Origin: Corallochytrium limacisporum Hawaii | Lineage: Eukaryota > Protista > Pluriformea | DNA length: 64,000 nt | Direction of reading: 5' to 3' | Assembly (NCBI GenBank): GCA_002811645.1 | Contig: PDIP01000079.1 | Span: 19,576-83,575, forward strand | In this document: positions 26,830 to 40,604 of the stretch, piece by piece | Layout of the letters: every line of letters starts with the position of its first letter | How positions within the stretch are numbered: the stretch's first letter is position 1 | The notes under the pieces: generated by a model | Database searches by the model: none | Seen by the model: only the letters and a program-made list of their open reading frames with translations | Told to the model about the DNA's origin: nothing | Position numbers and translations under genes: made by a program

Positions 26830-27143
26830 CCCCCCCCCCCCCCCCCCCCCCGGGGGCCGCGGGCGAGGGGGTCTCTTGCCCTCATGGGGACTTCACGCTA
26901 TTTCCACCTACTGAGGAACATGGAAGTTCAATTATATGTAGCTATTTGATGTCCCCTACAGAAAAATAAGTTCGTTCGAAAAGACACTGGGTTTACATTT
27001 ACGTTGCCCCTGAAGCAATACATATGAACTAAAGAATGGGAAGAAGGTAGAAAGGCATTTAGAAAGGCATCAGTGTTTATTGTGGCAATTCATAGGTGTT
27101 ATATACTGTAGAATTTCGGCACTGCATACTGAGTCTGCGCAAT

Positions 27144-27737
27144 ATGGAGGTCTTGAAAGCAGACGCAGGTGTTTTGACTAATTTTGAAGTACTTGATTTG
27201 GTACGGGAAGTTCGATCAAAGGCAGCCACGGTACGTATGAGTACCCTTGGCAGTGTCGAGGATCTCTTGGACGAGACTAACAAACCCAACGGCAAGAAGG
27301 ATACCGCAACGAACGGAAGTTCAAGTGCAAACGAAGCCTCCAATAACGACGGGTCTGGCAGTCCGCTACCCCGTGAATCCTACAGACCGCAGCACAAGTC
27401 ACTGATGACCGTGACTTATGAGGTACAGCAGTACCTTGAAGAGACCTCATGCGTTGCTCAGACCGCGGACATTGTCATCGCCGCCAAGGACACATTTCGA
27501 GGATTGGAACTCCGGGACGAGGAAATTATTCAAATCATTAACTCACGACCTGCCAACTTGGTTGAATTGGCGATCACCATTCCGGACATGGACGAGCGCT
27601 TTTCTGAAGAGGCACTGGATCAGATCCTGAATACCATTGCTGACACCTTGCCTTCGGAACAGAGTCTGGACGTTCCCAAGGAACCCATCGTCGAAGACGA
27701 GGATGTTAAAGATGTCAAAAGTGAGGATGGAAAATGA
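27144..27737 (+). CDS. RNA polymerase III subunit RPC9/C17 (CRCP; Rpb4 family)
   Basis: MEVLKADAGVLTNFEVLDLV, TVTYEVQQYL, EIIQIINSRP, MDERFSEE; AAT-ATG at 27144. Confidence 0.9.
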   Translation: MEVLKADAGVLTNFEVLDLVREVRSKAATVRMSTLGSVEDLLDETNKPNGKKDTATNGSSSANEASNNDGSGSPLPRESYRPQHKSLMTVTYEVQQYLEETSCVAQTADIVIAAKDTFRGLELRDEEIIQIINSRPANLVELAITIPDMDERFSEEALDQILNTIADTLPSEQSLDVPKEPIVEDEDVKDVKSEDGK

Positions 27738-27856
27738 AGAATAGGATAAGTGATACCTGTCAACATTAAAGAAATTTTGTGGTTTCACACTGCATAAGTT
27801 GACTACGGAATGGAAAAGTTTCTAGACTACTGTATACATTACGATTGAGATTTCTA

Positions 27857-29107
27857 TCATGCCATCTGTCCTCCAGCGGCACCCATGGCTGCCAGCAGCT
27901 GGGCCTGGTTACGGTACGGATCATCAGGAACAATGGAAACAAAGAAGTCGCGCACCAGCAGCACAGTGGCCTTCACCACACCAAGGCGCTGGGGCTCTTG
28001 AGGTTGCTCACTTTGTTCGCTTCCATCCTGACCCTGTCGCTGTGCTTCGGCAGTGCCATTAGCCGAGTCTTCTGCAGATGCGTCATCTTCGCCACCTTCC
28101 CTCTCAGAGCTGTCACGTGGCTGAGCCCGCTCAGTCACGGTCTCTTCCCGCTGTTGTTCATCTGATGGAGGCTGGTTCCCCTCTTGTCTCCGCTGTTCCT
28201 CCTCTGCTGCCTGACGGCGTCGTGCCTCCTCACGCTCCTTGCGTTCCTGTGCTTCCCGTTCCTGCTGACGCCTTCGCATAGGATCCAGATAGTACTCATA
28301 CATGGCCTGCTGCATGAGGTAGATGCCCAGACCGAGCAATGCCACCGCCGCGACACGAGCCCAGTTTCCGTGTTGTGCCATGACAAAAACCATGACCAAA
28401 GCCTTCACTAGGGTCCATACTAGGCTATGGTTGTGGCGCTCAGCAATACCCATGTCTTGTCCATTGTCCTCGACAAGAGCCTGCAGGCGGAAGCGACCTT
28501 CATCCTCGTCCACGTTCTCATCATTGTTCTCCTCGACCTCTTCAACTTCGATAGGTCCCTCCACGTTAGTTTCGGGTTCACGACCCTGAGTGTTCTGGCT
28601 CGTCCCAAAGACGCCTGAGTGAGCTTCCTTTGTGAAATAGCCGCTCGCACCTGCCCCAGCAGCCGGTAGGCACTGGGCCGGAACTGCGTACGGCAGGCCA
28701 TTGTAGTGGCACACAACCCATTGTCCATCAAAGCCAGGGAAGGGAGCTGGTAGGGCAGGGTACGCTGTCGGTTGAGGAGTCCGGCAGTACTGTTGTGGTG
28801 TCCGAGCTGGCTGGGAACTTGTTTCAACCTCTGCTGCCTTGACGGGCTCCTTTGCTTTTCCAACTACGACTTCCTGGTCCTTGCTAATCACGAAGCACTC
28901 CACTTTTCCGTCCGTGGCAACGCTATACAGTGGACACGTCGATGCGACTTCCTTGCCCTTGACTATCCATTTCTGTTCTTCATTTATTCCGTACTCTTTG
29001 CTCAAGAGTTTTTTGGCTGATCCTACAGTGTCCAAAGCCATGGCCTGGGCCTTAAGCACGGCCCTACTCGGGATGTGTCGTGCGTATATTTCTACTGAAG
29101 CCGTCAT
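27857..29107 (-). CDS. HERP/Usa1-like ERAD membrane protein with N-terminal ubiquitin-like domain
   Basis: N-terminal UBL-like region (TVGSAKKLL..EQKWIVKGKEV); hydrophobic hairpin WTLVK..GNWARV..IYLMQ; C-terminal FFVSIVPD. Confidence 0.75.
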   Translation of the reverse strand: MTASVEIYARHIPSRAVLKAQAMALDTVGSAKKLLSKEYGINEEQKWIVKGKEVASTCPLYSVATDGKVECFVISKDQEVVVGKAKEPVKAAEVETSSQPARTPQQYCRTPQPTAYPALPAPFPGFDGQWVVCHYNGLPYAVPAQCLPAAGAGASGYFTKEAHSGVFGTSQNTQGREPETNVEGPIEVEEVEENNDENVDEDEGRFRLQALVEDNGQDMGIAERHNHSLVWTLVKALVMVFVMAQHGNWARVAAVALLGLGIYLMQQAMYEYYLDPMRRRQQEREAQERKEREEARRRQAAEEEQRRQEGNQPPSDEQQREETVTERAQPRDSSEREGGEDDASAEDSANGTAEAQRQGQDGSEQSEQPQEPQRLGVVKATVLLVRDFFVSIVPDDPYRNQAQLLAAMGAAGGQMA

Positions 29108-29117
29108 GGTTAACTTG

Positions 29118-29318
29118 CTGACAAAAGAATTTGTCTCCCGGAAATTCTATCACACCACTTATGATTCGCAAATTGGATAAACACTGAGTATTCCCTATCA
29201 CATCCATACAGACGAGTAGTCATTATAAATCACAAGTTCACAGTATAAGTCTTAAATTGTAATGGTTGGGTTCAAATAGCACCATTGCCATACTCCACAC
29301 AAGTATGGTTAGGCGTAC
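29118..29318 (-). other. Putative 5'-UTR intron of the HERP-like gene
   Basis: Minus strand GAAG|GTACGC donor; TTCTTTTGTCAG| acceptor 10 nt before the ATG; donor choice uncertain. Confidence 0.4.
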
Positions 29319-31521
29319 CTTCAATTGCATACGACCTTGTAGAACGTCGTTTGGAACCACGAACGCGAACCCTTTGCCTGCGAATCTATGTTCCTGGCGG
29401 GCTTAACCAACAAGTGGTCTGCGGGTCCTACAGGGGATGGTCTATTTATTGTCTCGGTTGCACGTTCGTCACGGGACGGATTGGGGTGCGTGATGTGTCA
29501 ATCTGGCGTTCGCTTCCTGCTCCATCCCAAGCGACTCCGATTTTCCCCTTGCACCCCCTCTTAACCCCTCTTGCGGTCTACCCCTTCCACTGTCCTGGGC
29601 TTTTGTCTTCTGCATTTTCTCCCTTTCTCTTTCTTATTTTTTCTTCTTTGGGCCTCCGGTGCGAACTGTGGTCAGTCAGAAATTCCCTCTCTCGTGTCTC
29701 CCGACTGCAAAGGGTGTCATGCTATGAAACCGTTCTCCGCTGGTTTCACCACTTCTTGATTTTCTTTTTCCTTGGACTCTCGGGCAGTTTGCTACGGGCC
29801 TTGGCCTTCCTCGCCACACACATTCCCCATCGTCTTCCCATCGTCCGCTCAGCGGGCTTCCGGATGGGCCCCAAGGGTCGACGAAACAACGGACCTCTCT
29901 CCTGAAGTGCTGACACCTGGGCAGGGACGAAAAAAAAAAGTGGGCGGGGGTATACTGAGACAGTGGCAACCTGAGCTTTGCAACGGTGTGGCCATTCTCC
30001 GTTTCCCTCTCTCCCCTTTTTCCTTTTTTTTTCTTTCTTCCTTTTCTCATCTACTCTTATTCCCCCCTTGGAGAAACTTTGCACCGCGGTCGGCTTGGGA
30101 AGAAGGAAAACTACCAAGGACGACAGAGGTCGTGCAGGGGTAGGGGTGTGGGGACAAATTAACACAAGAGATGGCTGGGTATTTTTTTCTTCTTCCTTTA
30201 ATTCTGGGCGTTGACCAAAATTGTAAATCGTGTGTCGTCCTGTCCCGTTATAATTGTATGGGATGGAGCACACCACCCTTTCCCGCCAGGAAGTTTTACT
30301 ACCTTTGGAGCGCCGCTGGTCCACGGCCTCCGACAAATTCTTTTGTTCCTTTTCTTTTTCTTTTCGAACTGACGCCGCCGTAAATCACGCGGGGTCAGCC
30401 GGGTTCATCGGGCCAGTTCTCCGGGTCTTTTTCTTTTTTTTTTTTTGCGAGTTTTCTTCGCACCTGACCACTTTTCCTTTCCATTTATCCGTGCCAGAGG
30501 GTAGGGCAGGGAGGGAGGGGAGGGAGAAAAAATGGGGGTAAAAATAGTGGGCGCACTACCTCCCTTCCCCTCCCTTCCCCTCCCTGATTCTGTCTGGTAC
30601 ATTTACCTCCGCAGCTGCAGCCGTTGACCTGGCCAGCGTTGATTGGTCGGTCGGAGCCTCTCCCCGCGGGGAGGGGGGGGTGGTCGCGCTGGGCCTCCGT
30701 ACCCCTTCCGGGAAGAAATTGCGATGTGCCATGCGATGGATTATGGCAAGCACGTCAGCTATAGATGACCGGTGTTGCAGTATGTATATAGAAAGTAGAA
30801 GACTATTACTATCATCTTGTCACTTCTTGGGTTGCTCTGGTTGTGTGCACCGGTGACATGCCCGACTGTCGACGTGTCCGACCCCAATAATTGCGTTGCG
30901 CCCCCTCCCCCCCCCACAAATTTACGCGGCTACAGAAACGGAGAGGCCTGGTCAGTAGTAAATATACCCGAGTTGAAAAACGTAGCGATGGACCAGAAGC
31001 CCGAGACGAGTACGTCGAAGTGCAACCGTGAAAATAGTCACGGTACGCACGGAGCACTGTGTGGTACGCTCGGCCCATAATGGAACGCAACCGATCTGTG
31101 GCCAAAACTATGCATACTCGCGATAAGATCACCGGAAGCAACAGCGAGCTTGGCATAGTTTCTTGGTGGTGAAAGGTTGTCCCGCTTCCTCTCTTCCCGC
31201 CCCCTCCCCCCGGCCCCTGGAGCCAGCCCTTGAGCGGAGGAAAGCAGTCCTACAGCCGATCTCGATTCTGGGGCCTATTTTCGACGTGAATAATATTTGT
31301 CTGAATCAAATGGTTTCCCGGGTCTGTCCCGGAAGAGGGGCGCGGGTTCCGGTCGTAAACATCACGATGGTGAGAAGGTTGAAAAGTAATAGCTTGGGTG
31401 GAACGGTGGAGAGCTGGATCCGCGCGTATCCTGATGGTTGTACACTCATCAGTTTTTGTTCGCTTCGGTTTCATCATGATGTGAAAAGAAGAGGGATAAG
31501 TTCGTTGCTAAATACCAGATC

Positions 31522-33117
31522 ATGGCGGCCGTACCAACACGGGTGCTGCCCGCGCAGCGGCACGGATCATACTCAGGGACGCGAATCCAGGGGTATCTCA
31601 TGAAATGGACCAATCTGGCCTTTGGATATCAGAGACGGTACGTTGTAGTTACCAGGGGGCTCCTGGGTTACGCGTACAGCGAAGAGGACTACCACGCAGG
31701 GGCTGGCCGTGGGTCTATGGTCATGAGAGGTGCCGTAGTCACACGCGATCCTACCGACAGCGAAAGCTTCACGGTTGAGACCTACGCAGCGAAATACTAC
31801 TTGCGGGCAAGTTCTCCAGCTGATAGGGACCGCTGGTTGACAGCTCTCGAGCTGGCCAGTAAGGACAGTACGGCGGTTGATGGAGAAGCCGTGGATACAC
31901 TAATGATCCTGCAAACGCTGAATCTGCGCCTGTACGAGGTATCGGATCTCAAAAAGAACATGGACCGCGTACTGCAGAGTACAAAGTCAATACTAAGGCA
32001 GGAGAAGGTACCGATTGATGCCGGAATGTTTGATGGCATTGCAGATAGCCTGCGGACCCAGATCCACTTTCTAGATGGGGCGTTGGAGAGCTTTATCAAC
32101 AGTGTGGATACACAACAAAAGCAGTGGCGTAAGGACATTATGGACGAGGTCAAAAGGATCAAAGAAGCTGGTATGTCTGATGCAGGCACTCCAGTTATTA
32201 CTCCACGCACTCCGCGGGCTGCGCTGGCACCCCTCCGTTCCCAAGACATATTGCTAGCGCGGGTGGATTCGTTGTCGAGGCGTGGCGATGACTACGACGA
32301 CGATGACGATAGCTTCTATGACGCTGGAGAGAGCATCATTGCATCCTCGGCAGGAGTAGAGGAGAAGCCTGATGTGATGGAAACAGAGCTGCAAAAAGAA
32401 GCAAAGGCCGCCCATGCAGCCATTCGAGGGATCCGAAAGTCACTTACCAAGCCACTACCGGACGGATTCGACGATACGGACCTACTGCGCTTTCTGATTG
32501 CCCGCAACTTTGACATTGCAAAAGCCACGGCAATGCTGGATTCCTGTATTGATTGGAGACAGTCCTTTTTGCCTGCTACCATTACTACCGAAGAGGTTCA
32601 ATCGGAGCTGGGGAAGGGATCCATATTCCTCTGTGGTCACGACCTTGAGAAGCGGCCAATTCTCATCTTGGACCTAGGCAAGAACACACCCAGCAACACT
32701 GACATTGTGATCTTCACAAGAATGGTAGTATTATTTATGGAAAGCGTAGTTGACTGTATGCCACACAATGTGCACCAATTTACCATGATCCTGGATTTCA
32801 ACACCTTCTCCCTGAATTCCGCTGACATGAATCAGACTAAGGGGCTCTTCCAGGTATTGTCGGACTACTACCCAGAGCGACTTGGATGTTGCCTCTTGGT
32901 GGATGCTCCATGGATGTTCAATGCAGTTTGGTATGCTCTAAAAGGTCTCATGAGCCCGCGGACCATCTCCAAGATTCATTTCATCAATCGTGGAGACATA
33001 CCCAAATATATCGAAGGAAAAGAAATACCACAGCGGTTTGGAGGACGGATGGACTATGAGTACTCTGTGGACCCGAAGGCGCCCCTTGGGCCCGCCACTA
33101 AATACTTGACCCCTTAG
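31522..33117 (+). CDS. PH domain (OSBP/CERT type) + FFAT motif + CRAL-TRIO/Sec14 lipid-transfer protein
   Basis: GYLMKWTN..GYQRRY..YLRASSPADRDRWLTALE (PH); DDDDDSFYDAGE (FFAT); DLLRFLIARNFD, GHDLEKRPI, YYPERLG..APWMF, TISKIHF, PQRFGG (CRAL-TRIO). Confidence 0.92.
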   Translation: MAAVPTRVLPAQRHGSYSGTRIQGYLMKWTNLAFGYQRRYVVVTRGLLGYAYSEEDYHAGAGRGSMVMRGAVVTRDPTDSESFTVETYAAKYYLRASSPADRDRWLTALELASKDSTAVDGEAVDTLMILQTLNLRLYEVSDLKKNMDRVLQSTKSILRQEKVPIDAGMFDGIADSLRTQIHFLDGALESFINSVDTQQKQWRKDIMDEVKRIKEAGMSDAGTPVITPRTPRAALAPLRSQDILLARVDSLSRRGDDYDDDDDSFYDAGESIIASSAGVEEKPDVMETELQKEAKAAHAAIRGIRKSLTKPLPDGFDDTDLLRFLIARNFDIAKATAMLDSCIDWRQSFLPATITTEEVQSELGKGSIFLCGHDLEKRPILILDLGKNTPSNTDIVIFTRMVVLFMESVVDCMPHNVHQFTMILDFNTFSLNSADMNQTKGLFQVLSDYYPERLGCCLLVDAPWMFNAVWYALKGLMSPRTISKIHFINRGDIPKYIEGKEIPQRFGGRMDYEYSVDPKAPLGPATKYLTP

Positions 33118-33689
33118 ATAGGACTTTGGAAGAGGTCCATGGGAGGGCTACAGTCACTGCTGATGCCATCAGGAGACTCATCATCTCCATCTTTGGGAGA
33201 ACGATCAAATGTCAGCTGCCGTCGAGTAGGGTCATTCTTGTCCAACGGTACGAGGATGCGGCGACCGCGTCGAGTGGCGGCTCTAGGTGCTACCTGTGTC
33301 GGAACCTTGCCGTCGCTGCCCGATATGTTTTTCTTTTTGCACTGACGGTACACTGTCTTTGCATCGGGGGATATTGGAGTGGCACACGGAACATAGCGGT
33401 GACTGGATTGCGAACCCGACGGTGGGTCACCCATCCGCCGCTCTTGGTCACGAATGTCAAACGCAGTCTGCAGCGATCGACTGGCCTCAATAAGCATCCT
33501 CCGATTTTCTGATAACTCGTCAGGGCTAGGTACCTGATTGTTCCTCAATCGACGAGAATGAGATGATTCTGCAGGTGTATGTGGCACTTCCATGCTCTGC
33601 AGTGGAGAATGCCGCGAGTCCAGTGTGCTGATCATCGTTGCAAGATCGGCATCCATAGTCGATTCACACACAATGTCCGATGGGTACAT
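33114..33689 (-). CDS. Small disordered protein with CDK sites, D-box and cyclin-binding RxL motif
   Basis: 191 aa ORF; many SP/TP, RRILVPLDKN, RRQLTF; its stop overlaps the neighbour's stop. Confidence 0.65.
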   Translation of the reverse strand: MYPSDIVCESTMDADLATMISTLDSRHSPLQSMEVPHTPAESSHSRRLRNNQVPSPDELSENRRMLIEASRSLQTAFDIRDQERRMGDPPSGSQSSHRYVPCATPISPDAKTVYRQCKKKNISGSDGKVPTQVAPRAATRRGRRILVPLDKNDPTRRQLTFDRSPKDGDDESPDGISSDCSPPMDLFQSPI

Positions 33690-34041
33690 TCAGTTCTGCC
33701 ACCTCTGGAATCTGTGTGGAGAGCAATACAAGGTGCTGTGGACAACGTGCTCCGTCGCCACGACTGCGCCAGTCACAAGTACCTATTTGGTAGGCGCTGA
33801 AATCCAATCAGCAGGTGCTGAACAAAACGATCGAGTCCGAGACCCGCGTTTCCCCCCACCGGATGGGGGGAAGGGTGACAGCCGGCTTTTGAGACTTCTT
33901 TTCCAACCCCGGTTGTTGAGACTCGTAGCGATTACCTGTATATACATCGATAACGTATTCATGTAAGGTAGGGTTAAAACATTCAATATGAAAAGTAGTC
34001 AACAATAGTATACGTATAAAAATGACCTGTATCACTACTCC

Positions 34042-34053
34042 TTTCGCGCGAAA
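34042..34053. promoter_or_regulatory. Palindromic double E2F-like site TTTCGCGCGAAA
   Basis: Perfect 12-bp palindrome with TTTCGCGC on both strands, in a divergent promoter. Confidence 0.5.
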
Positions 34054-34438
34054 AAAGGGACCCCAGTGACGCCCCAGCAGGGAGACAGGGCTGCCCGAGC
34101 CGGGACTCCGCCGGAGGGGGCGACCAGGGCTTGCGCTCAGCACTGCTACCCGTATTGAGGCTTGCGGGCGATACCAAGGGGTATAAGAGCGGTGTCGAAA
34201 AGTTCCCAATATGGCCTGGTGCTCGTTTCCTTATTTCAAAGACTCACCAACAAGACTTTCAGGGTGTCTACACTGTAGGAAAAGTGTAGAAGGAATCACG
34301 TCAACGTGGGCGATAACATGCGGTTTGTTGTCGGCGACAGGACAAATCGAGTGACGTAAAATTGTGCGCAGTAGTTCAAAACCATGTGACCCCTGATCAA
34401 AGTTTGGGACTTGACCAAGTGGACCTCAAGTGACCGAG

Positions 34439-37400
34439 ATGAGGCGAAGACATTCGTTCCTGTGGTCGATCACAGGACTGACCGTGGTCCTACTCCTCTT
34501 GGGACATGCATGGGCAGCTGAGACTTCCGACCCGGAAGTAGATAGTGTGGACTCCGGTGTACAGTCTGCGGAAAATAAGGTAGATCCCGAACATGATGTC
34601 TATTTTTCTGTGCAAGGCTATACACAGGCTGAAGGATGCAGAAACGGTTATCAAAACCTCGAGATCGGTTTGTTTCAAGGGGATGATCTATACAGAATTG
34701 CCACAACTGATGGGGTAGGCCGCTATGAATTTATTGATGTACCACCGGGTGAGTATGCGATCCGTACTCTTCATGAAAAGGATATGACCAAAACTTTGGT
34801 TCCAGACGAAGAAGAAAAGGATGTCAAAGAATTTGAGCAGCCAGATCAGCCGAGTGACATGGATGGCAGACAGAAAAGTATCCGTCCCAGTTGGGCCATC
34901 CCCGTAAAAGTTGTTGACCGCAGTGTGAAGATAGGACAAACTCTAACCGTCGTGGGTCCGACCGTCATGGGCCAGGTTGTTTTCAAGGATCAACTTTCGG
35001 AAGGCACTGCTCAGGATTCTGAAACACTGTTGGAGTTGGATTTATTTCGACGCATGGAAGGCGAAAGTCTCCTATTAGAACGCAGTTCCCTCATTCGCCG
35101 GTCCGGCGATACATATTACTACGAGGAGGTGCCTTGTGGCCAGTACATATTTTCATTGCGCGATCCCCAGAAACTAGTGGATGTCAATCTTCAGCAGGGT
35201 AAGAGAATGCGATTGTCCCCTGTGCTGCAAAAGCAACACAATATCGTCGCTGAGGTGTCGGAAGCGTATTTTGTTGCTAACTTTCGGACAATTGATGGAA
35301 AGCCGCTTTCGGGCGTTCGAGGTTTCTTTGATGGTGAGAAGCTGGCCAAAAGTTCATCGTCCGGTAATCTCAGCGTCTGGACGCGGAGCCTCGGATACAA
35401 GCCCATCGTCCAAGACGGCATTGACATTCAAGGGCCATCTGCGCCAGGGACTCTGTCGTTTAATCACACGCAGTGTATCTTTCCATCAGAATCTCTGGCA
35501 TCATTGCGACAAATTCGGGTTCAAAATCGTCGACAAGGAAATCAAGACAAAGTATCTCGGACGTACATTTGTGAGCGGGTGAGGCGATGCTTTCAAATTG
35601 AATTGGACGATTTTACGAAAACGGGGAACATAGTTGTCGTAAAGGTGTTTACTCCTGGCCCGGTCAGTGTACCTGTCCCAGAGGAAGCCAAGCGGTATCA
35701 ACTCTCACGAACCACTTACGATGGAGGGGAACTTGTATGTGACTCGTTCCCTTCAGATCATATCATCACAAATTGGGCACTGCCTGGTGGCAAGCAAGTA
35801 TATGTTCCAGGTAAACGGCCACGTTTCACACCAACACGGTCCATGTTTCCTTTTGTCGTTCCCATTCCAATGGCATCTGGCACATATCTCAACAGTGGAC
35901 GGGACGAAGTGCCATCGCAGAAGCCCCTGGCAACTATTTCCTATCAGACACCGTATATTGCGGGCCAGGTGCATCTTTTGCCGAACACTATGCAGCTTTT
36001 CCCGGATCCAAAGGACCTGTGGTCGAGAATTAAAGTGAAGGTGAAAAGCCGGGAGGAGACGGTGACACTTGAGCCCCACGCTGTCCAGGACCAACAGCAT
36101 GAGCCAAGTCACTTGGCTCATGCATTTTCCTATGGACCGCTTACCACCACGACCTACGATGTTGTGGTGGATGCCAACTTTTGGTGTTGGTCAAATGAGC
36201 ACATGTCGCTATCAGTGGGATCTGGTGGTATTGTCAAACCCGTTGTGGTGGGGTCAACGTGGAATAGTTCGTCGAGCGACAATGCTTATGTTGAATTCCA
36301 CCAGATCGGATTCTCTATACAAGTCCAAAGTCCCGGACCCATTGACCTTTCTGTGATCAAAGTGGGCCAGGGTGATGATCCTACTATGGCGGAATATTTT
36401 GTGAGACTCGATCGCAAGGGCCTCCATGTTCTTTGCTTACCGGATCTGGGTCCATATCGTATTCTGCCGGCTGGCGAACGTTTTCACTTTGTGCCAAAAA
36501 GGGATCTGATCGTCCAACCCAGCATTGCCACCCTATTTAACTCAAAATGGGAGGTCCTTGCTGATCTGAAACCCGATGAGTGGACTGCGGAATTTGTAGG
36601 CCATGTTTCCGTACCCGAGGCTACAGTGATACATCTCTTGAACGGAAAGCCAAAGACCGGAGAAGCCATCAAAGGCCTTGTCTCATCTCTGAAGATCTAC
36701 GTCATGTCCAACCTGACATATGAAGTGCACCAGGCAACCGTGCGTCTTCTGTCTGTGGGTTCTATGAGTGTGTATGGCCGAGACGTTGGCGATGATTCCG
36801 ATGGCGACGAGGAGGCAAAGACTGAACTCTTGATCAGCTTCCAAATGTCCCTTCCGTACGTAGGCGAATGGTACGTTGTGCCCAAATGGGACGATCGCGC
36901 CGTGTTTTATCCAGCATGGCACACGATTGTGCCATCGCTTGCCTCACCAGTGGGGCCCTTCCTGGAGCCAATGACTGCCGTAGCAGCACGTCCAGTGTCC
37001 GGTTGCCTGAAACCACGGGCCAGAGGACTGCCGGTTGTCATGCGTTGGACTGACGAGGTTTCCATGATGTCAAAGGAGGATTGTGTGTTTACCGATCGGA
37101 GCGGTTGCTTTACCATGCATCACGCTTTGCCGCTTCACGTCAAGCCAGTCTTGGCCCCACAGGAGCGCAGCTATGAACCGTTGGACATTGACGGAGATGG
37201 TATACCGGAACCGGTTCCAGCATCCATCGAAGAGAATTTGGGGTTGCCGGAAGAGGCAGTGGAAGCGTGGAACGAAGTCAGCGACGATCGTATATTCGTC
37301 ACACTGAAGACAATCACCCAGGGCACAATTCTCATTTCTCTGTTCGATAACCGGGCCCAACCGTTCGAAGATGTGACAATCCTGCTTTCCAGTGCTACGG

Positions 37401-38731
37401 GCTACCCACTGACAAGGGAACGGAGCGATAGTAAAGGGCATGTGCAATTTGACGGGCTCGATGCCGGGTCGTACATCGTGCTGGCAGAAGGTTCCGATCC
37501 AAAGTTCTCTCCTGCCTCCAAGGTCCTCGCGTTGAAGCAAGGTGGCACTGCGTCCACCGTCCTCATTGGCAAGCGTATCAACGTGTCAGTTGGGGGTGTC
37601 CTGCGAGATGCTACTGGCACCCCCGTGGCCGATGCGTCCTTCTCCGTCAGCGACGCCAAGTACTTCCCCAGTACGGGGGGCCTCCTGGACGGGCCAAAAA
37701 TGGATCTATCAACGAGCCACGACAGCTCTACTCCTATCGTCTACAAAACTGTAAGCGGCAGAGATGGTCACTTCGTGCTCAAAGATCTTCAACCTTATCG
37801 CCAGTACGTCGTGTCCGTGAACATGGCTCGCCTTCCGCAGGACATTATCGACATTGCTCCGCGCCAACAGCGCATAACCACTAAGAACCGGAACCAAATG
37901 AACGCCCTCTCCTTCACCGCTCGGTCCCTTGGGGGTAAGTTTGACGTGGTAGGCCACGTCCACTGCTCCCCTCGTCACCGCCACCGAATTTTCGCCGTCC
38001 TGTACGACATATCCGTTAGTAACCAACCGGAGGTACTCCGCGTGCCGCTGAATTACACGTCTGATTTTGAGGTGACTGGCCTTAAGGAAGAGAAGCGGAT
38101 GAGCTATCTTATCAAAGTGGGGCCCCTGGATGAGGACACCGCCGCCTTTCCCTGCGATCCGGTCGAATTGACGTTTCTGACCTTCAACCCTTCGACTGAC
38201 GACGGCGCCGCAAATGTAGAGAGACGACGTATAGATCTCCACCCCAACTCGTGCCGATCCCTGGCGGACAGCATCATGGGCGGCTTCCTCTGGTCTGAGC
38301 TGTCCCTGCTCGCACGCATAGTCCTGGCCGTGATTATGGGTATGATTCTGGGCTCCGCAGTGCGTGGTCTGGTGCGGCTTTCAAAGCGGTTAGTGTCTAT
38401 GGTACCAGAGTCCGCCAGCAGCGGCGGCGGCGCCGGCAGTGGGGACCAAAGTGCAGGGAAGGACCGCGCCATCCTCCGCCGCCAATTGCGCTCATCAGGC
38501 CTCCGTCACCGCCGCTGGGCTTCCGACCACAATCTCCCGGAACTCGGCAACGACAGCACCAACAGCGTGCCCACGGACGAGGTGCCGAACGGCGCCAGTG
38601 AAACTGATATTGCCACGGCCGTTGCCGATAATCCAGCCAATTGGGAGCAATTCGGCGCTGCTTTTGCAGCAGAAGAACTCAGGAACAGCGCTGGTCCGTG
38701 TCTCGAGACCGAGAAGCGCAAGAGTTCTTGA
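34439..38731 (+). CDS. NOMO1: Nodal modulator (NOMO)-like type I ER membrane protein
   Basis: Signal peptide; repeated prealbumin-like domains (TTDGVGRYEFIDVPPGEY); FWCW and FHQIGF motifs; one C-terminal TM; ATG 34439. Confidence 0.78.
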   Translation: MRRRHSFLWSITGLTVVLLLLGHAWAAETSDPEVDSVDSGVQSAENKVDPEHDVYFSVQGYTQAEGCRNGYQNLEIGLFQGDDLYRIATTDGVGRYEFIDVPPGEYAIRTLHEKDMTKTLVPDEEEKDVKEFEQPDQPSDMDGRQKSIRPSWAIPVKVVDRSVKIGQTLTVVGPTVMGQVVFKDQLSEGTAQDSETLLELDLFRRMEGESLLLERSSLIRRSGDTYYYEEVPCGQYIFSLRDPQKLVDVNLQQGKRMRLSPVLQKQHNIVAEVSEAYFVANFRTIDGKPLSGVRGFFDGEKLAKSSSSGNLSVWTRSLGYKPIVQDGIDIQGPSAPGTLSFNHTQCIFPSESLASLRQIRVQNRRQGNQDKVSRTYICERVRRCFQIELDDFTKTGNIVVVKVFTPGPVSVPVPEEAKRYQLSRTTYDGGELVCDSFPSDHIITNWALPGGKQVYVPGKRPRFTPTRSMFPFVVPIPMASGTYLNSGRDEVPSQKPLATISYQTPYIAGQVHLLPNTMQLFPDPKDLWSRIKVKVKSREETVTLEPHAVQDQQHEPSHLAHAFSYGPLTTTTYDVVVDANFWCWSNEHMSLSVGSGGIVKPVVVGSTWNSSSSDNAYVEFHQIGFSIQVQSPGPIDLSVIKVGQGDDPTMAEYFVRLDRKGLHVLCLPDLGPYRILPAGERFHFVPKRDLIVQPSIATLFNSKWEVLADLKPDEWTAEFVGHVSVPEATVIHLLNGKPKTGEAIKGLVSSLKIYVMSNLTYEVHQATVRLLSVGSMSVYGRDVGDDSDGDEEAKTELLISFQMSLPYVGEWYVVPKWDDRAVFYPAWHTIVPSLASPVGPFLEPMTAVAARPVSGCLKPRARGLPVVMRWTDEVSMMSKEDCVFTDRSGCFTMHHALPLHVKPVLAPQERSYEPLDIDGDGIPEPVPASIEENLGLPEEAVEAWNEVSDDRIFVTLKTITQGTILISLFDNRAQPFEDVTILLSSATGYPLTRERSDSKGHVQFDGLDAGSYIVLAEGSDPKFSPASKVLALKQGGTASTVLIGKRINVSVGGVLRDATGTPVADASFSVSDAKYFPSTGGLLDGPKMDLSTSHDSSTPIVYKTVSGRDGHFVLKDLQPYRQYVVSVNMARLPQDIIDIAPRQQRITTKNRNQMNALSFTARSLGGKFDVVGHVHCSPRHRHRIFAVLYDISVSNQPEVLRVPLNYTSDFEVTGLKEEKRMSYLIKVGPLDEDTAAFPCDPVELTFLTFNPSTDDGAANVERRRIDLHPNSCRSLADSIMGGFLWSELSLLARIVLAVIMGMILGSAVRGLVRLSKRLVSMVPESASSGGGAGSGDQSAGKDRAILRRQLRSSGLRHRRWASDHNLPELGNDSTNSVPTDEVPNGASETDIATAVADNPANWEQFGAAFAAEELRNSAGPCLETEKRKSS

Positions 38732-38891
38732 GGACCGAGCGCAATCAGTCCACAGCGTATTTATGTTTGCAACACAGTGGACCCCATTAAGGCTGAAAAG
38801 CGGTTACATGGCATACATTTGGTCTTTACTGAGTATAGTAAAAAGATTATAGTAACAGAGTAGAAATGAGTGTGATGGTGTACCTTTGCTC

Positions 38892-40604
38892 TCAAGCCTC
38901 GGTCTGCTTCTGTCCCGCAGCAACGTTTCCTCCGAGGCTGGTCTTGGCTGTGGCACTAACTGGTGTGCCGTATTCGCGATTCAGGATAGTCAAGGTTTGC
39001 TTGCTGCGCTCAAAGACCGCGTAAGAAATGGCCGCCGCCGGCACGACCTTCATCATGCTCGGCAGCAAACCACGGTAGAATCCACGGAACCCCTCTCGCG
39101 CCCAAATCTGCTTGGCCAATCCAATAGCACCGACCGGGTCCTTCTTTACGGTGCCTGATGCGGCACCGCCGGCCGGCAGAATCGCTTCCGTCTGCAAGCG
39201 TGTCCGCACAACACCGATTGGGAAGGCAGCGACCATGCCACACGTCGCGCTGACCGTTCCGCAGCCCAGCAGCACAAACACGCCCGGTGTCCTACTGGGA
39301 TCTTCCTGGTTCCTCTCAATGTACCCTTTGCGCAGCAACTCATACACGGTCAGATCTATGCCTGCGAACGGAATGATGCCAATACATGAGGCAGTTAGGC
39401 CCCGGTAGAAGGAGCCAATGCCCTCCGTGCGCAGCATCTTGCCCATAGCATCCAGTAGACCGCGGTATGTGCCCTCCGGAGCGACCGCCAGGCGTGCTTT
39501 GAGTACCTCGAGGGGGTAGATCGCCGACGTCGACAACACACCGGCGGCACCACCAGCAGCTAGTCGCTGCAGCGGCGTGATCTTGTCCGCCGGCTGGTCG
39601 CCAATGATCAGTTTCTTGACGCGGTCGTACGCAAGGAACTTAATCGCCGTCTCAGGGGCAATCTTTAACACATTCACACCGTTCCCACGCCACAAAGACC
39701 ACAGGCCCCCGTCTCCGTACAGACGACGCAAGACCCTCAACGGTCCGTCTGGTTTTACTCCGGGGGCCGTCTGTCCACCCTGTACCATCATGACCATACG
39801 AATGCGGTCGATCGGAGCTGTGGTCGTGCGGGACACTGCGCCTGCCACCGCCCCGCTCACCAGATGTGGCACCCAATTTGGAAAGAGCTTTTTCTTTCTG
39901 ATTCGTTGTTGCTTGGCAATGTCCGTCACCCCGACGGTCTCATGCTCCTCGTCTTCATCCTCGTCTTCATCTTCGTCCTCATCGACGTCCTTGAGCAGAT
40001 CATCCGGAAGGCCGCTCTCACCAATGTCAATGGCGGCCCCTCTACCCCAGTATTGAAAAATGTCGGTCAAGTTTGCCTTTGGATACATCGACAGGAACCG
40101 AAAGAACTCCGGGAAGCTCACCAAACCGTCACCATCTGCATCCACGGCCACAGTCAGACGCTTCACCGACTCGGCGTTGACCTTGTAGTCCAACTGTTTG
40201 AGTGCTGCTCGGATCTCCTTCTCATCCAGCTGTCCACTGTGATCCTTGTCAATACGATCGAAGGTCGCCCTCAGCTCCGTGTACCGGTGCTCCATATACG
40301 CTGCAAATTCCTGAATGTCCACGACACCGTCTTTGTTTGTGTCGGTGCGTTTGAAGAAATCCTCGAGTTGGTGTGGGAGGATCGGCAGTCCCAGAAAGCT
40401 CATGGCCTGCACAAGCTCCTGCTTTGACAGCACTCCGTCGCCGTTGACGTCCATGGCCCGGAAGAGATCCTTGGCTGCGACATGGACTTCCTCTGTACAG
40501 CTGCATTCGAAGAGTTTCTCAGTTCTGTCCCGCAGATCTTTCTCAAAGAATGATGCAACCACCCGGGTCGGCTTTTTACTACTGCGCTCCTGTGATGGAG
40601 TCAT
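38892..40604 (-). CDS. Calcium-binding mitochondrial ATP-Mg/Pi carrier (SCaMC/SLC25A23-25-like)
   Basis: Four EF-hands (DVNGDG, DTNKDG, DKDHSG, DADGDG); AVSRTTTAPIDR, LWRGNGVNVLKIAPETAIKF, YPLEVLKARL. Confidence 0.95.
   Translation of the reverse strand: MTPSQERSSKKPTRVVASFFEKDLRDRTEKLFECSCTEEVHVAAKDLFRAMDVNGDGVLSKQELVQAMSFLGLPILPHQLEDFFKRTDTNKDGVVDIQEFAAYMEHRYTELRATFDRIDKDHSGQLDEKEIRAALKQLDYKVNAESVKRLTVAVDADGDGLVSFPEFFRFLSMYPKANLTDIFQYWGRGAAIDIGESGLPDDLLKDVDEDEDEDEDEDEEHETVGVTDIAKQQRIRKKKLFPNWVPHLVSGAVAGAVSRTTTAPIDRIRMVMMVQGGQTAPGVKPDGPLRVLRRLYGDGGLWSLWRGNGVNVLKIAPETAIKFLAYDRVKKLIIGDQPADKITPLQRLAAGGAAGVLSTSAIYPLEVLKARLAVAPEGTYRGLLDAMGKMLRTEGIGSFYRGLTASCIGIIPFAGIDLTVYELLRKGYIERNQEDPSRTPGVFVLLGCGTVSATCGMVAAFPIGVVRTRLQTEAILPAGGAASGTVKKDPVGAIGLAKQIWAREGFRGFYRGLLPSMMKVVPAAAISYAVFERSKQTLTILNREYGTPVSATAKTSLGGNVAAGQKQTEA

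What the first reader, a model, noticed from the sequence alone, without database searches (positions are those of the whole stretch)
31522..33117. OSBP/CERT-type contact-site protein with a Sec14 (CRAL-TRIO) cargo domain: candidate new ER-Golgi lipid shuttle
Seen, in one uninterrupted ORF: (i) a PH domain with the KWTN..GYQRR signature of the CERT/OSBP/FAPP PI4P-binding group (about 31582-31860); (ii) a helical linker resembling the OSBP/CERT middle region (LQTLNLRLYEV.., QQKQWRKDI); (iii) an acidic tract followed by SFYDAGE at 32311-32331, a near-consensus FFAT (EFFDAxE); (iv) a complete CRAL-TRIO_N + CRAL-TRIO domain. Known: PH + FFAT bridges Golgi PI4P to ER VAP, and the cargo domain is ORD in OSBP, START in CERT and GLTP in FAPP2. 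Inference: a domain swap produced a fourth type that moves Sec14-type cargo (PI, PC or sterol) at contact sites. I do not know a described protein with this layout.
Basis: partly seen in the sequence, partly recalled or inferred. Interest (0 to 1): 0.85.

Follow-up and report, generated by a model that had tools for sequence, protein, structure and literature searches.

The report
OSBP/CERT-type tether with Sec14 cargo domain
A single-celled relative of animals and three related protists carry an apparently undescribed lipid-transfer protein: the ER-to-Golgi tethering arm of OSBP/CERT joined to a Sec14 lipid pocket, so it probably delivers phosphatidylinositol at organelle contact sites.

Summary
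Observation confirmed. 31522-33117(+) is a single-exon 531-aa gene: PH (aa 22-113), two predicted long helices, an acidic tract plus FFAT motif (SFYDAGE, published score 1.0, cut-off 2), and a full Sec14/CRAL-TRIO fold. It is not chimeric: DNA contigs and a probable RNA contig from another strain span it without joints. The genome is most likely Corallochytrium limacisporum. The PH domain's best matches are ORP11, CERT and FAPP1. The same layout, FFAT included, occurs in Chromosphaera, Creolimax and Sphaeroforma, whose Sec14 domains form one clade with it (96/93). The genome separately encodes OSBP, an ORP9-like protein, CERT and VAP, so this is an extra family. Corrections: the PI-binding residues are kept but the PC-binding ones are not, so PC cargo is unlikely; linker homology to OSBP/CERT is not shown by sequence; the donor family is unresolved; the Creolimax PH lacks KWTN. 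PH+Sec14 fusions without FFAT arose separately in other protists. I found no paper describing this layout, and no earlier scan note on other DNA. Likely role: VAP/PI4P-anchored PI exchanger at ER-Golgi contacts (inferred, about 55%). New variant of a known kind.

The parts
31522..33117 (+). Single-exon gene, 531 aa: PH - two helices - FFAT - Sec14/CRAL-TRIO
   Evidence: contigs without joints; 6 of 9 listed strain differences in the ORF are synonymous
31439..33913 (.). Span of a probable RNA contig (run X4, other strain). A second run (X3) also begins at 31443, about 80 nt before the ATG
   Evidence: RNA status is the tool's guess and contigs cannot fix ends or strand
31585..31860 (+). PH domain of the CERT/OSBP/FAPP group (aa 22-113); K28, R39, Y50, R63, G64 align with conserved CERT residues
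   Evidence: 40% identical to this genome's OSBP PH, 31% to its CERT PH
31882..32001 (+). Predicted central helix 1 (aa 121-160)
   Evidence: AlphaFold2 model, moderate confidence
32020..32166 (+). Predicted central helix 2 (aa 167-215); putative dimerisation core by analogy with OSBP, CERT and ORP9/11
   Evidence: PMC11302984; Atlas shape search returns OSBP, CERT, FAPP clusters
32287..32310 (+). Acidic tract (aa 256-263) upstream of the FFAT core
   Evidence: sequence
32311..32331 (+). FFAT-like core SFYDAGE (aa 264-270), score 1.0; orthologues EFFDAIA, EFFEILE, EFFEIEE at the same place
32377..33114 (+). Sec14 module (about aa 286-531): N-terminal helices plus CRAL-TRIO (aa 365-508, nt 32614-33045). 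PI residues R328, E452, T481, K484 kept; K66 equivalent is N329; PC residues absent (M406, F420, M422)

Best explanation
A soluble contact-site lipid-transfer protein of a small family found in Corallochytrium and ichthyosporeans. It arose once, by fusion of a CERT/OSBP/FAPP-type targeting arm (PH + two-helix core + FFAT) to a Sec14 domain. Shown: anatomy, conservation, single origin of the Sec14 part, ligand-residue pattern. Inferred working: the FFAT binds the ER protein VAP; the PH binds PI4P on the trans-Golgi (or another PI4P-rich membrane); the helices dimerise the protein; the Sec14 domain, about 15 residues after the FFAT, moves between the apposed membranes and exchanges phosphatidylinositol (made at the ER) for a second, non-PC hydrophobic ligand. 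Delivering or presenting PI to a PI 4-kinase would regenerate the PI4P that OSBP/ORP9 consume and that holds the PH domain in place, a local feed-forward loop.
For: PH best matches are ORP11/CERT/FAPP1 with a seven-order E-value gap to other PH domains, same by structure; all top 10 Atlas shape matches of the N-terminal half are OSBP/ORP, CERT or FAPP-type clusters. FFAT scores 1.0-1.5 in all four orthologues, like this genome's OSBP and CERT (1.0-1.5), while only 1 of 184 other proteins fetched (nearly all Sec14 hits) scores 1.5 or better. Four-genus Sec14 clade: SH-aLRT 99 in a 176-row tree, 96/93 in a careful tree. R65/E207/T236/K239 equivalents are invariant in all four (residues defined in PMC4945147, PMC12658205). 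VAP with an intact FKVKTT..YCVRPN and K-F pocket is present. Precedent: yeast Sfh2-4 transfer PI but not PC (PMC7385082).
Against: No experiment. The Creolimax PH has lost KWTN, and its PH and that of Sphaeroforma are long-branched, so PI4P/Golgi targeting may not hold for the whole family. The K66 equivalent is N/D; Sec14L6 lacks K66, barely binds PI and moves PI4P instead. Sfh5 keeps the PI residues yet is a poor PI transfer protein. Linker homology is not significant by sequence, and the N-half model was built on an alignment that held OSBP/CERT rows, so the Atlas result is partly circular. The genome already has three PITPs, one of 1132 aa that may be Nir2-like.
Confidence: 0.55

Rival explanations
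1. Same tether, but the Sec14 domain is a counter-exchanger that removes PI4P (or another phosphoinositide) from the PH-bound membrane and delivers sterol, squalene or another neutral lipid: an OSBP-like cycle with a different pocket.
For: K66 not kept, as in Sec14L6, which transfers PI4P. Closest structures are Sfh2-squalene, Sfh2-PI and SPF-oxidosqualene (Z 24.0, 23.2, 23.1). S173/T175 positions are hydrophobic (F420, M422).
Against: The Z values are tied within about 1 with Sec14 itself; the domain does not fall in the Csr1/Sfh2 clade; the genome has its own OSBP and ORP9-like proteins.
Confidence: 0.2
2. [quoted passage not shown] The second membrane may be plasma membrane, endosome or lipid droplet rather than Golgi.
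For: The FFAT is better conserved than the PI4P-binding loop (Creolimax lacks KWTN). Sfh5 precedent. MOSPD2 abstracts.
Against: In this protein and in Chromosphaera the CERT-type PH signature is intact; all three other known proteins with this arm transfer lipid.
Confidence: 0.2
3. Assembly or annotation chimera, or a recent non-functional fusion.
For: None found.
Against: Contigs from three samples cover the ORF without joints; single contigs cross the PH-Sec14 junction; the same layout is in three other genera; strain differences are mostly synonymous.
Confidence: 0.01

Closest known systems
CERT (PH - helical core - FFAT - START)
   Same: PH group, two-helix middle region, FFAT just before a C-terminal lipid-transfer domain, similar size; top structural match of the PH (rmsd 1.3 A over 96 columns)
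   Different: Cargo domain is Sec14, not START; this genome has its own CERT (597 aa, L018)
OSBP / ORP9-11 (PH - helices - FFAT - ORD)
   Same: PH closest to this genome's OSBP (40%) and to ORP11 in PDB; FY-type FFAT as in this genome's OSBP (EFYDAME)
   Different: No ORD; this genome has its own OSBP (814 aa) and ORP9-like protein (781 aa)
FAPP2 (PH - weak FFAT - GLTP)
   Same: PH group and modular logic
   Different: No GLTP domain; this genome's only GLTP hit is a stand-alone 232-aa frame
Yeast Sfh2/Csr1-Sfh4 and other non-PC Sec14 proteins
   Same: Full Sec14 fold, PI residues kept, PC residues absent; Csr1 is the best PDB sequence hit (E 1.9e-17)
   Different: They have no PH domain; the domain here forms its own clade, outside the Csr1 clade
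Nir2/RdgB (PITP + FFAT) and MOSPD2 (CRAL-TRIO + MSP + TM)
   Same: Functional analogues: PI transfer coupled to VAP (Nir2, from memory and PMC7385082), or a CRAL-TRIO domain at ER contacts (MOSPD2, PMC7610837)
   Different: Nir2 uses an unrelated fold and no PH; MOSPD2 is the FFAT receptor, not a ligand
Neurofibromin Sec14-PH and Dbl-family Sec14-DH-PH
   Same: Hold both Sec14 and PH-like domains
   Different: Opposite order, divergent Sec14 (Z about 13), unrelated PH, no FFAT, signalling enzymes
Uncharacterised protist PH+Sec14 fusions (Balamuthia, Dracoamoeba, Salpingoeca punica, an MMETSP protein)
   Same: PH N-terminal to CRAL-TRIO
   Different: Separate Sec14 lineages, non-KWTN PH, no FFAT (best scores 3-6), often a hydrophobic N-terminus

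Membership tests
CERT/OSBP/FAPP PH-FFAT contact-site proteins | N-terminal PH domain of the KWTN (PI4P-binding) group | tested here: met
   K28, R39, Y50, R63, G64 align with CERT (their role in PI4P binding is from memory); the CERT lysine after Y54 is not kept
CERT/OSBP/FAPP PH-FFAT contact-site proteins | FFAT motif, score 2 or less, unstructured, conserved in orthologues | tested here: met
   scores 1.0, 1.5, 1.0, 1.0 (matrix); region disordered in the model
CERT/OSBP/FAPP PH-FFAT contact-site proteins | Two-helix central dimerisation core homologous to that of OSBP/CERT | tested here: inconclusive
   two long helices predicted; pairwise similarity not significant, but neither is it between this genome's OSBP and CERT
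CERT/OSBP/FAPP PH-FFAT contact-site proteins | VAP binding, PI4P binding, localisation to ER-Golgi contacts | not testable with these tools
   VAP gene with conserved pocket present; no multimer modelling or assay available
OSBP/ORP family | ORD (Oxysterol_BP) domain | tested here: not met
   no Pfam hit; C-terminal domain is Sec14
CERT | START domain | tested here: not met
FAPP2 | GLTP domain | tested here: not met
Sec14/CRAL-TRIO superfamily | Complete Sec14 fold with N-terminal helices | tested here: met
   Pfam E 1e-33; pLDDT 95, Z 21-24 to Sec14, Sfh1-3, SPF
Sec14/CRAL-TRIO superfamily | PI-binding residues R65, K66, E207, T236, K239 | tested here: met
   4 of 5 kept and invariant in the four orthologues (R328, E452, T481, K484); K66 is N/D
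Sec14p/Sfh1-type PI/PC exchangers | PC-binding residues Y151, S173, T175 | tested here: not met
   M406, F420, M422 by the alignment to 1AUA (definitions)
Sec14/CRAL-TRIO superfamily | Lipid binding and transfer in vitro | not testable with these tools
   needs purified protein

The most novel reading that the evidence does not exclude
A fourth cargo module on the PH-helix-FFAT scaffold: the first Sec14 protein hard-wired to both VAP and PI4P, which feeds PI to the Golgi PI 4-kinase at ER-Golgi contacts. If the fusion is also absent from Filozoa and fungi and present in Syssomonas, it is a rare shared genomic change that bears on the disputed grouping of Pluriformea with Ichthyosporea (Teretosporea).
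Probability: 0.4. Interest if true: 0.72.

Novelty: new variant of a known kind. Interest (0 to 1): 0.58.

Why it matters
It shows that the OSBP/CERT/FAPP targeting arm is a portable module that has captured a fourth, unrelated lipid pocket and kept it across four genera. Because the Sec14 domain is natively tethered between two defined membranes, it offers a clean system for the open question whether Sec14 proteins carry PI between membranes or only present it to PI 4-kinases (PMC7385082, PMC5486777). Its distribution may add a rare character to the unresolved position of Corallochytrium (PMC11426530). The limits: all parts are known, domain shuffling is common in these protists, and no function is shown.

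Tried and rejected
Chimera or spliced model: rejected; the gene is one exon, so no joined model was needed. Mis-annotated OSBP, CERT or FAPP2: rejected, the genome has separate genes. PC cargo: disfavoured. One ancient origin with amoebozoan PH+Sec14 proteins: not supported, the two groups are separate supported Sec14 clades with different PH domains and no FFAT, though the deep nodes are unresolved. My guess that the Balamuthia PH is ORP5/8-like was not supported. Naming the donor family: PH trees unresolved (query next to OSBP at 93/75, collapsed); AU tests do not reject monophyly of the four PH domains (p 0.12) or their place in the OSBP group (p 0.15), and do not show it. Linker homology by shuffling test: not significant. 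Two word-index searches with the Chromosphaera protein were uninformative; ESM Atlas feature searches were blank; a metagenome scan gave only ordinary Sec14 and Osh-like genes. Schaaf 2008 was not held and the paper cap stopped me reading the CERT PH residue literature and the fission-yeast VAP preprint that mentions Csr102.

Full report
Observation. The frame 31522-33117(+) gives 531 aa without stops. Pfam finds PH at aa 22-113 (E 4.5e-10) and CRAL_TRIO at 365-508 (E 1e-33); CRAL_TRIO_N is partial and below its cut-off. There is no hydrophobic segment outside the Sec14 core that suggests a membrane anchor.

Source and reality of the gene. The assembly is 24.1 Mb in 286 contigs with long intron-free frames, the protein is held in EukProt, and its closest relatives are ichthyosporean. 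This fits Corallochytrium limacisporum, 24.1 Mb (PMC5560861); the name is my inference. One DNA contig (possibly the assembly's source) spans the whole stretch. Two other samples, guessed to be RNA, begin at 31439 and 31443 and leave the upstream region empty; one spans 31439-33913 in one piece with 15 other letters, no gaps and no joints. Of the nine listed differences inside the ORF six are synonymous, and none touches a motif. The gene is real, single-exon and probably expressed.

Family. Searches of 5.8 billion and 1.84 billion proteins give three full-length relatives: Creolimax CFRG7549T1, Sphaeroforma SARC_00748 (partial) and Chromosphaera Nk52_evm3s379. All have PH, a middle region, an acidic FF motif and CRAL-TRIO in the same order. 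Their Sec14 domains form one clade: SH-aLRT 99 among 176 rows, 96/93 in a 47-row careful tree, with Corallochytrium outside (Chromosphaera (Creolimax, Sphaeroforma)). The genome separately encodes OSBP (814 aa), an ORP9-11-like protein (781), CERT (597), a PH-only protein (556), VAP (231), four other CRAL-TRIO matches and three PITPs. The protein is therefore an additional family, not a replaced OSBP or CERT. Only the best 150 of 5719 hits were listed, so more distant members may be missed.

PH domain. Against PDB the PH matches ORP11 (1e-15), CERT (1e-13) and FAPP1 (2e-10); the next PH scores 3e-3. The model's best structural matches are the same three. It is 40% identical to this genome's OSBP PH and 31% to its CERT PH. 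K28, R39, Y50, R63 and G64 align with CERT residues that I recall as forming the PI4P site (memory, not checked in a paper). Trees of this 100-residue domain do not resolve the donor. The Chromosphaera PH keeps KWTN; the Creolimax PH has lost it, and the Sphaeroforma model is cut before it.

Middle region. AlphaFold2 predicts helices at aa 121-160 and 167-215 with moderate confidence, then disorder to about aa 285. OSBP, CERT and ORP9/11 dimerise through a two-helix core at this place (PMC11302984). All ten Atlas shape matches for aa 12-285 are OSBP/ORP, CERT or FAPP-type clusters, with 116-171 residues aligned, but the model's alignment included OSBP and CERT rows. Sequence similarity of the linker to OSBP/CERT is not significant, as it is not between OSBP and CERT themselves.

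FFAT. With the published matrix (PMC3261905 Table S2A; cut-off 2) the motif scores 1.0, the next-best window 4.5, and 0 of 1000 shuffles reach 1.0. The orthologues score 1.5, 1.0 and 1.0 at the same position, equal to this genome's OSBP and CERT; 1 of 184 other proteins fetched scores 1.5 or better. S at position 1 and Y at position 3 are tolerated in tested motifs. The genome's VAP keeps the FKVKTT, YCVRPN and K-F pocket residues.

Sec14 domain. The model (pLDDT 95) aligns over about 235 residues with Sfh2, SPF, Sec14, Sfh1 and Sfh3 at Z 21-24; neurofibromin's Sec14 scores about 13. By the alignment to 1AUA the PI residues R65, E207, T236 and K239 are R328, E452, T481 and K484, invariant in all four proteins; K66 is N or D. 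The PC residues Y151, S173 and T175 are M406, F420 and M422 (definitions in PMC4945147 and PMC12658205). This is the pattern of non-PC Sec14 proteins such as Sfh2-4, which move PI and a second ligand like squalene or sterol (PMC7385082). Caveats: Sfh5 keeps the PI residues and barely transfers PI, and Sec14L6, which lacks K66, moves PI4P.

Mechanism. Shown: anatomy, conservation, one origin of the Sec14 part, ligand-residue pattern, presence of VAP. Inferred: FFAT-VAP anchors the protein to the ER, PH-PI4P to the trans-Golgi, the helices dimerise it, and the Sec14 domain on a short tether exchanges PI for a non-PC lipid, feeding PI 4-kinase and so the PI4P that OSBP and ORP9 spend (0.55). Rivals: a PI4P/neutral-lipid counter-exchanger (0.2); a sensor or tether without bulk transfer, possibly at another organelle (0.2); artefact (0.01).

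Novelty. Ten full-text searches found no description of a PH-FFAT-Sec14 protein; phrases joining PH and Sec14 return only neurofibromin. The library lacks most subscription papers and I could not query InterPro. PH+Sec14 alone is not unique: Balamuthia, Dracoamoeba, a JGI and an MMETSP protein, and Salpingoeca punica carry such fusions, with other Sec14 lineages, other PH types and no FFAT. FFAT+Sec14 without PH also occurs (Gonapodya Csr1-like protein; from memory fission-yeast Csr102 is a VAP partner, not read). The full OSBP/CERT-type arm on Sec14 was seen only in Corallochytrium and Ichthyosporea. Whether these two groups are sisters is disputed (PMC11426530); the fusion could serve as a shared character, but absence elsewhere has not been shown. 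The scan's notes hold no earlier report of this layout.

Verdict. A real, conserved, apparently undescribed architecture built from known parts: new variant of a known kind, interest 0.58.

Noticed in passing
P0035, P0077/P0184, P0034 (Balamuthia, Dracoamoeba, JGI): A separate amoebozoan-type family: hydrophobic N-terminus, PH, acidic linker, Sec14, no FFAT; own Sec14 clade (100/97). Could be a membrane-anchored contact-site Sec14 that arose convergently.
   Followed up: partly
P0056 (Salpingoeca punica) and P0074 (MMETSP): Further PH+Sec14 fusions: PH-Sec14-PH, and hydrophobic N-terminus-PH-Sec14; both unrelated to the family described here and without FFAT.
   Followed up: partly
P0047 (Gonapodya prolifera), aa 83-95: Csr1/Sfh2-clade Sec14 protein with a strong FFAT (score 1.0) before the Sec14 domain and no PH.
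   Followed up: no
window 33114-33117: The stop codon of this gene (TAG, +) overlaps the stop (TAA, -) of a convergent 191-aa orphan ORF at 33114-33689; one probable RNA contig covers both genes.
   Followed up: partly
L015:890-3334 (-), G000:C6: This genome's OSBP carries two FFAT-like motifs (aa 370 and 401, both score 1.5).
   Followed up: no
L016:2348-4018 (-), G000:C132: 556-aa protein with an internal KWTN-type PH domain, an N-terminal region of unknown (possibly PRELI/START-like) type and a C-terminal helical region; another unusual use of this PH group.
   Followed up: no
L014, G000:C132:81944-82372 (+): CRAL-TRIO match with one TAA inside: intron, sequencing error or pseudogene.
   Followed up: no
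window 27096-40604: Neighbours: Rpb4/RPC17-like (27096-27737 +), a 416-aa protein with a ubiquitin-like-looking start and membrane segments (27857-29107 -), a NOMO-like 1433-aa protein (34430-38731 +), and an EF-hand mitochondrial carrier (38892-40604 -). No functional link to the finding seen.
   Followed up: partly
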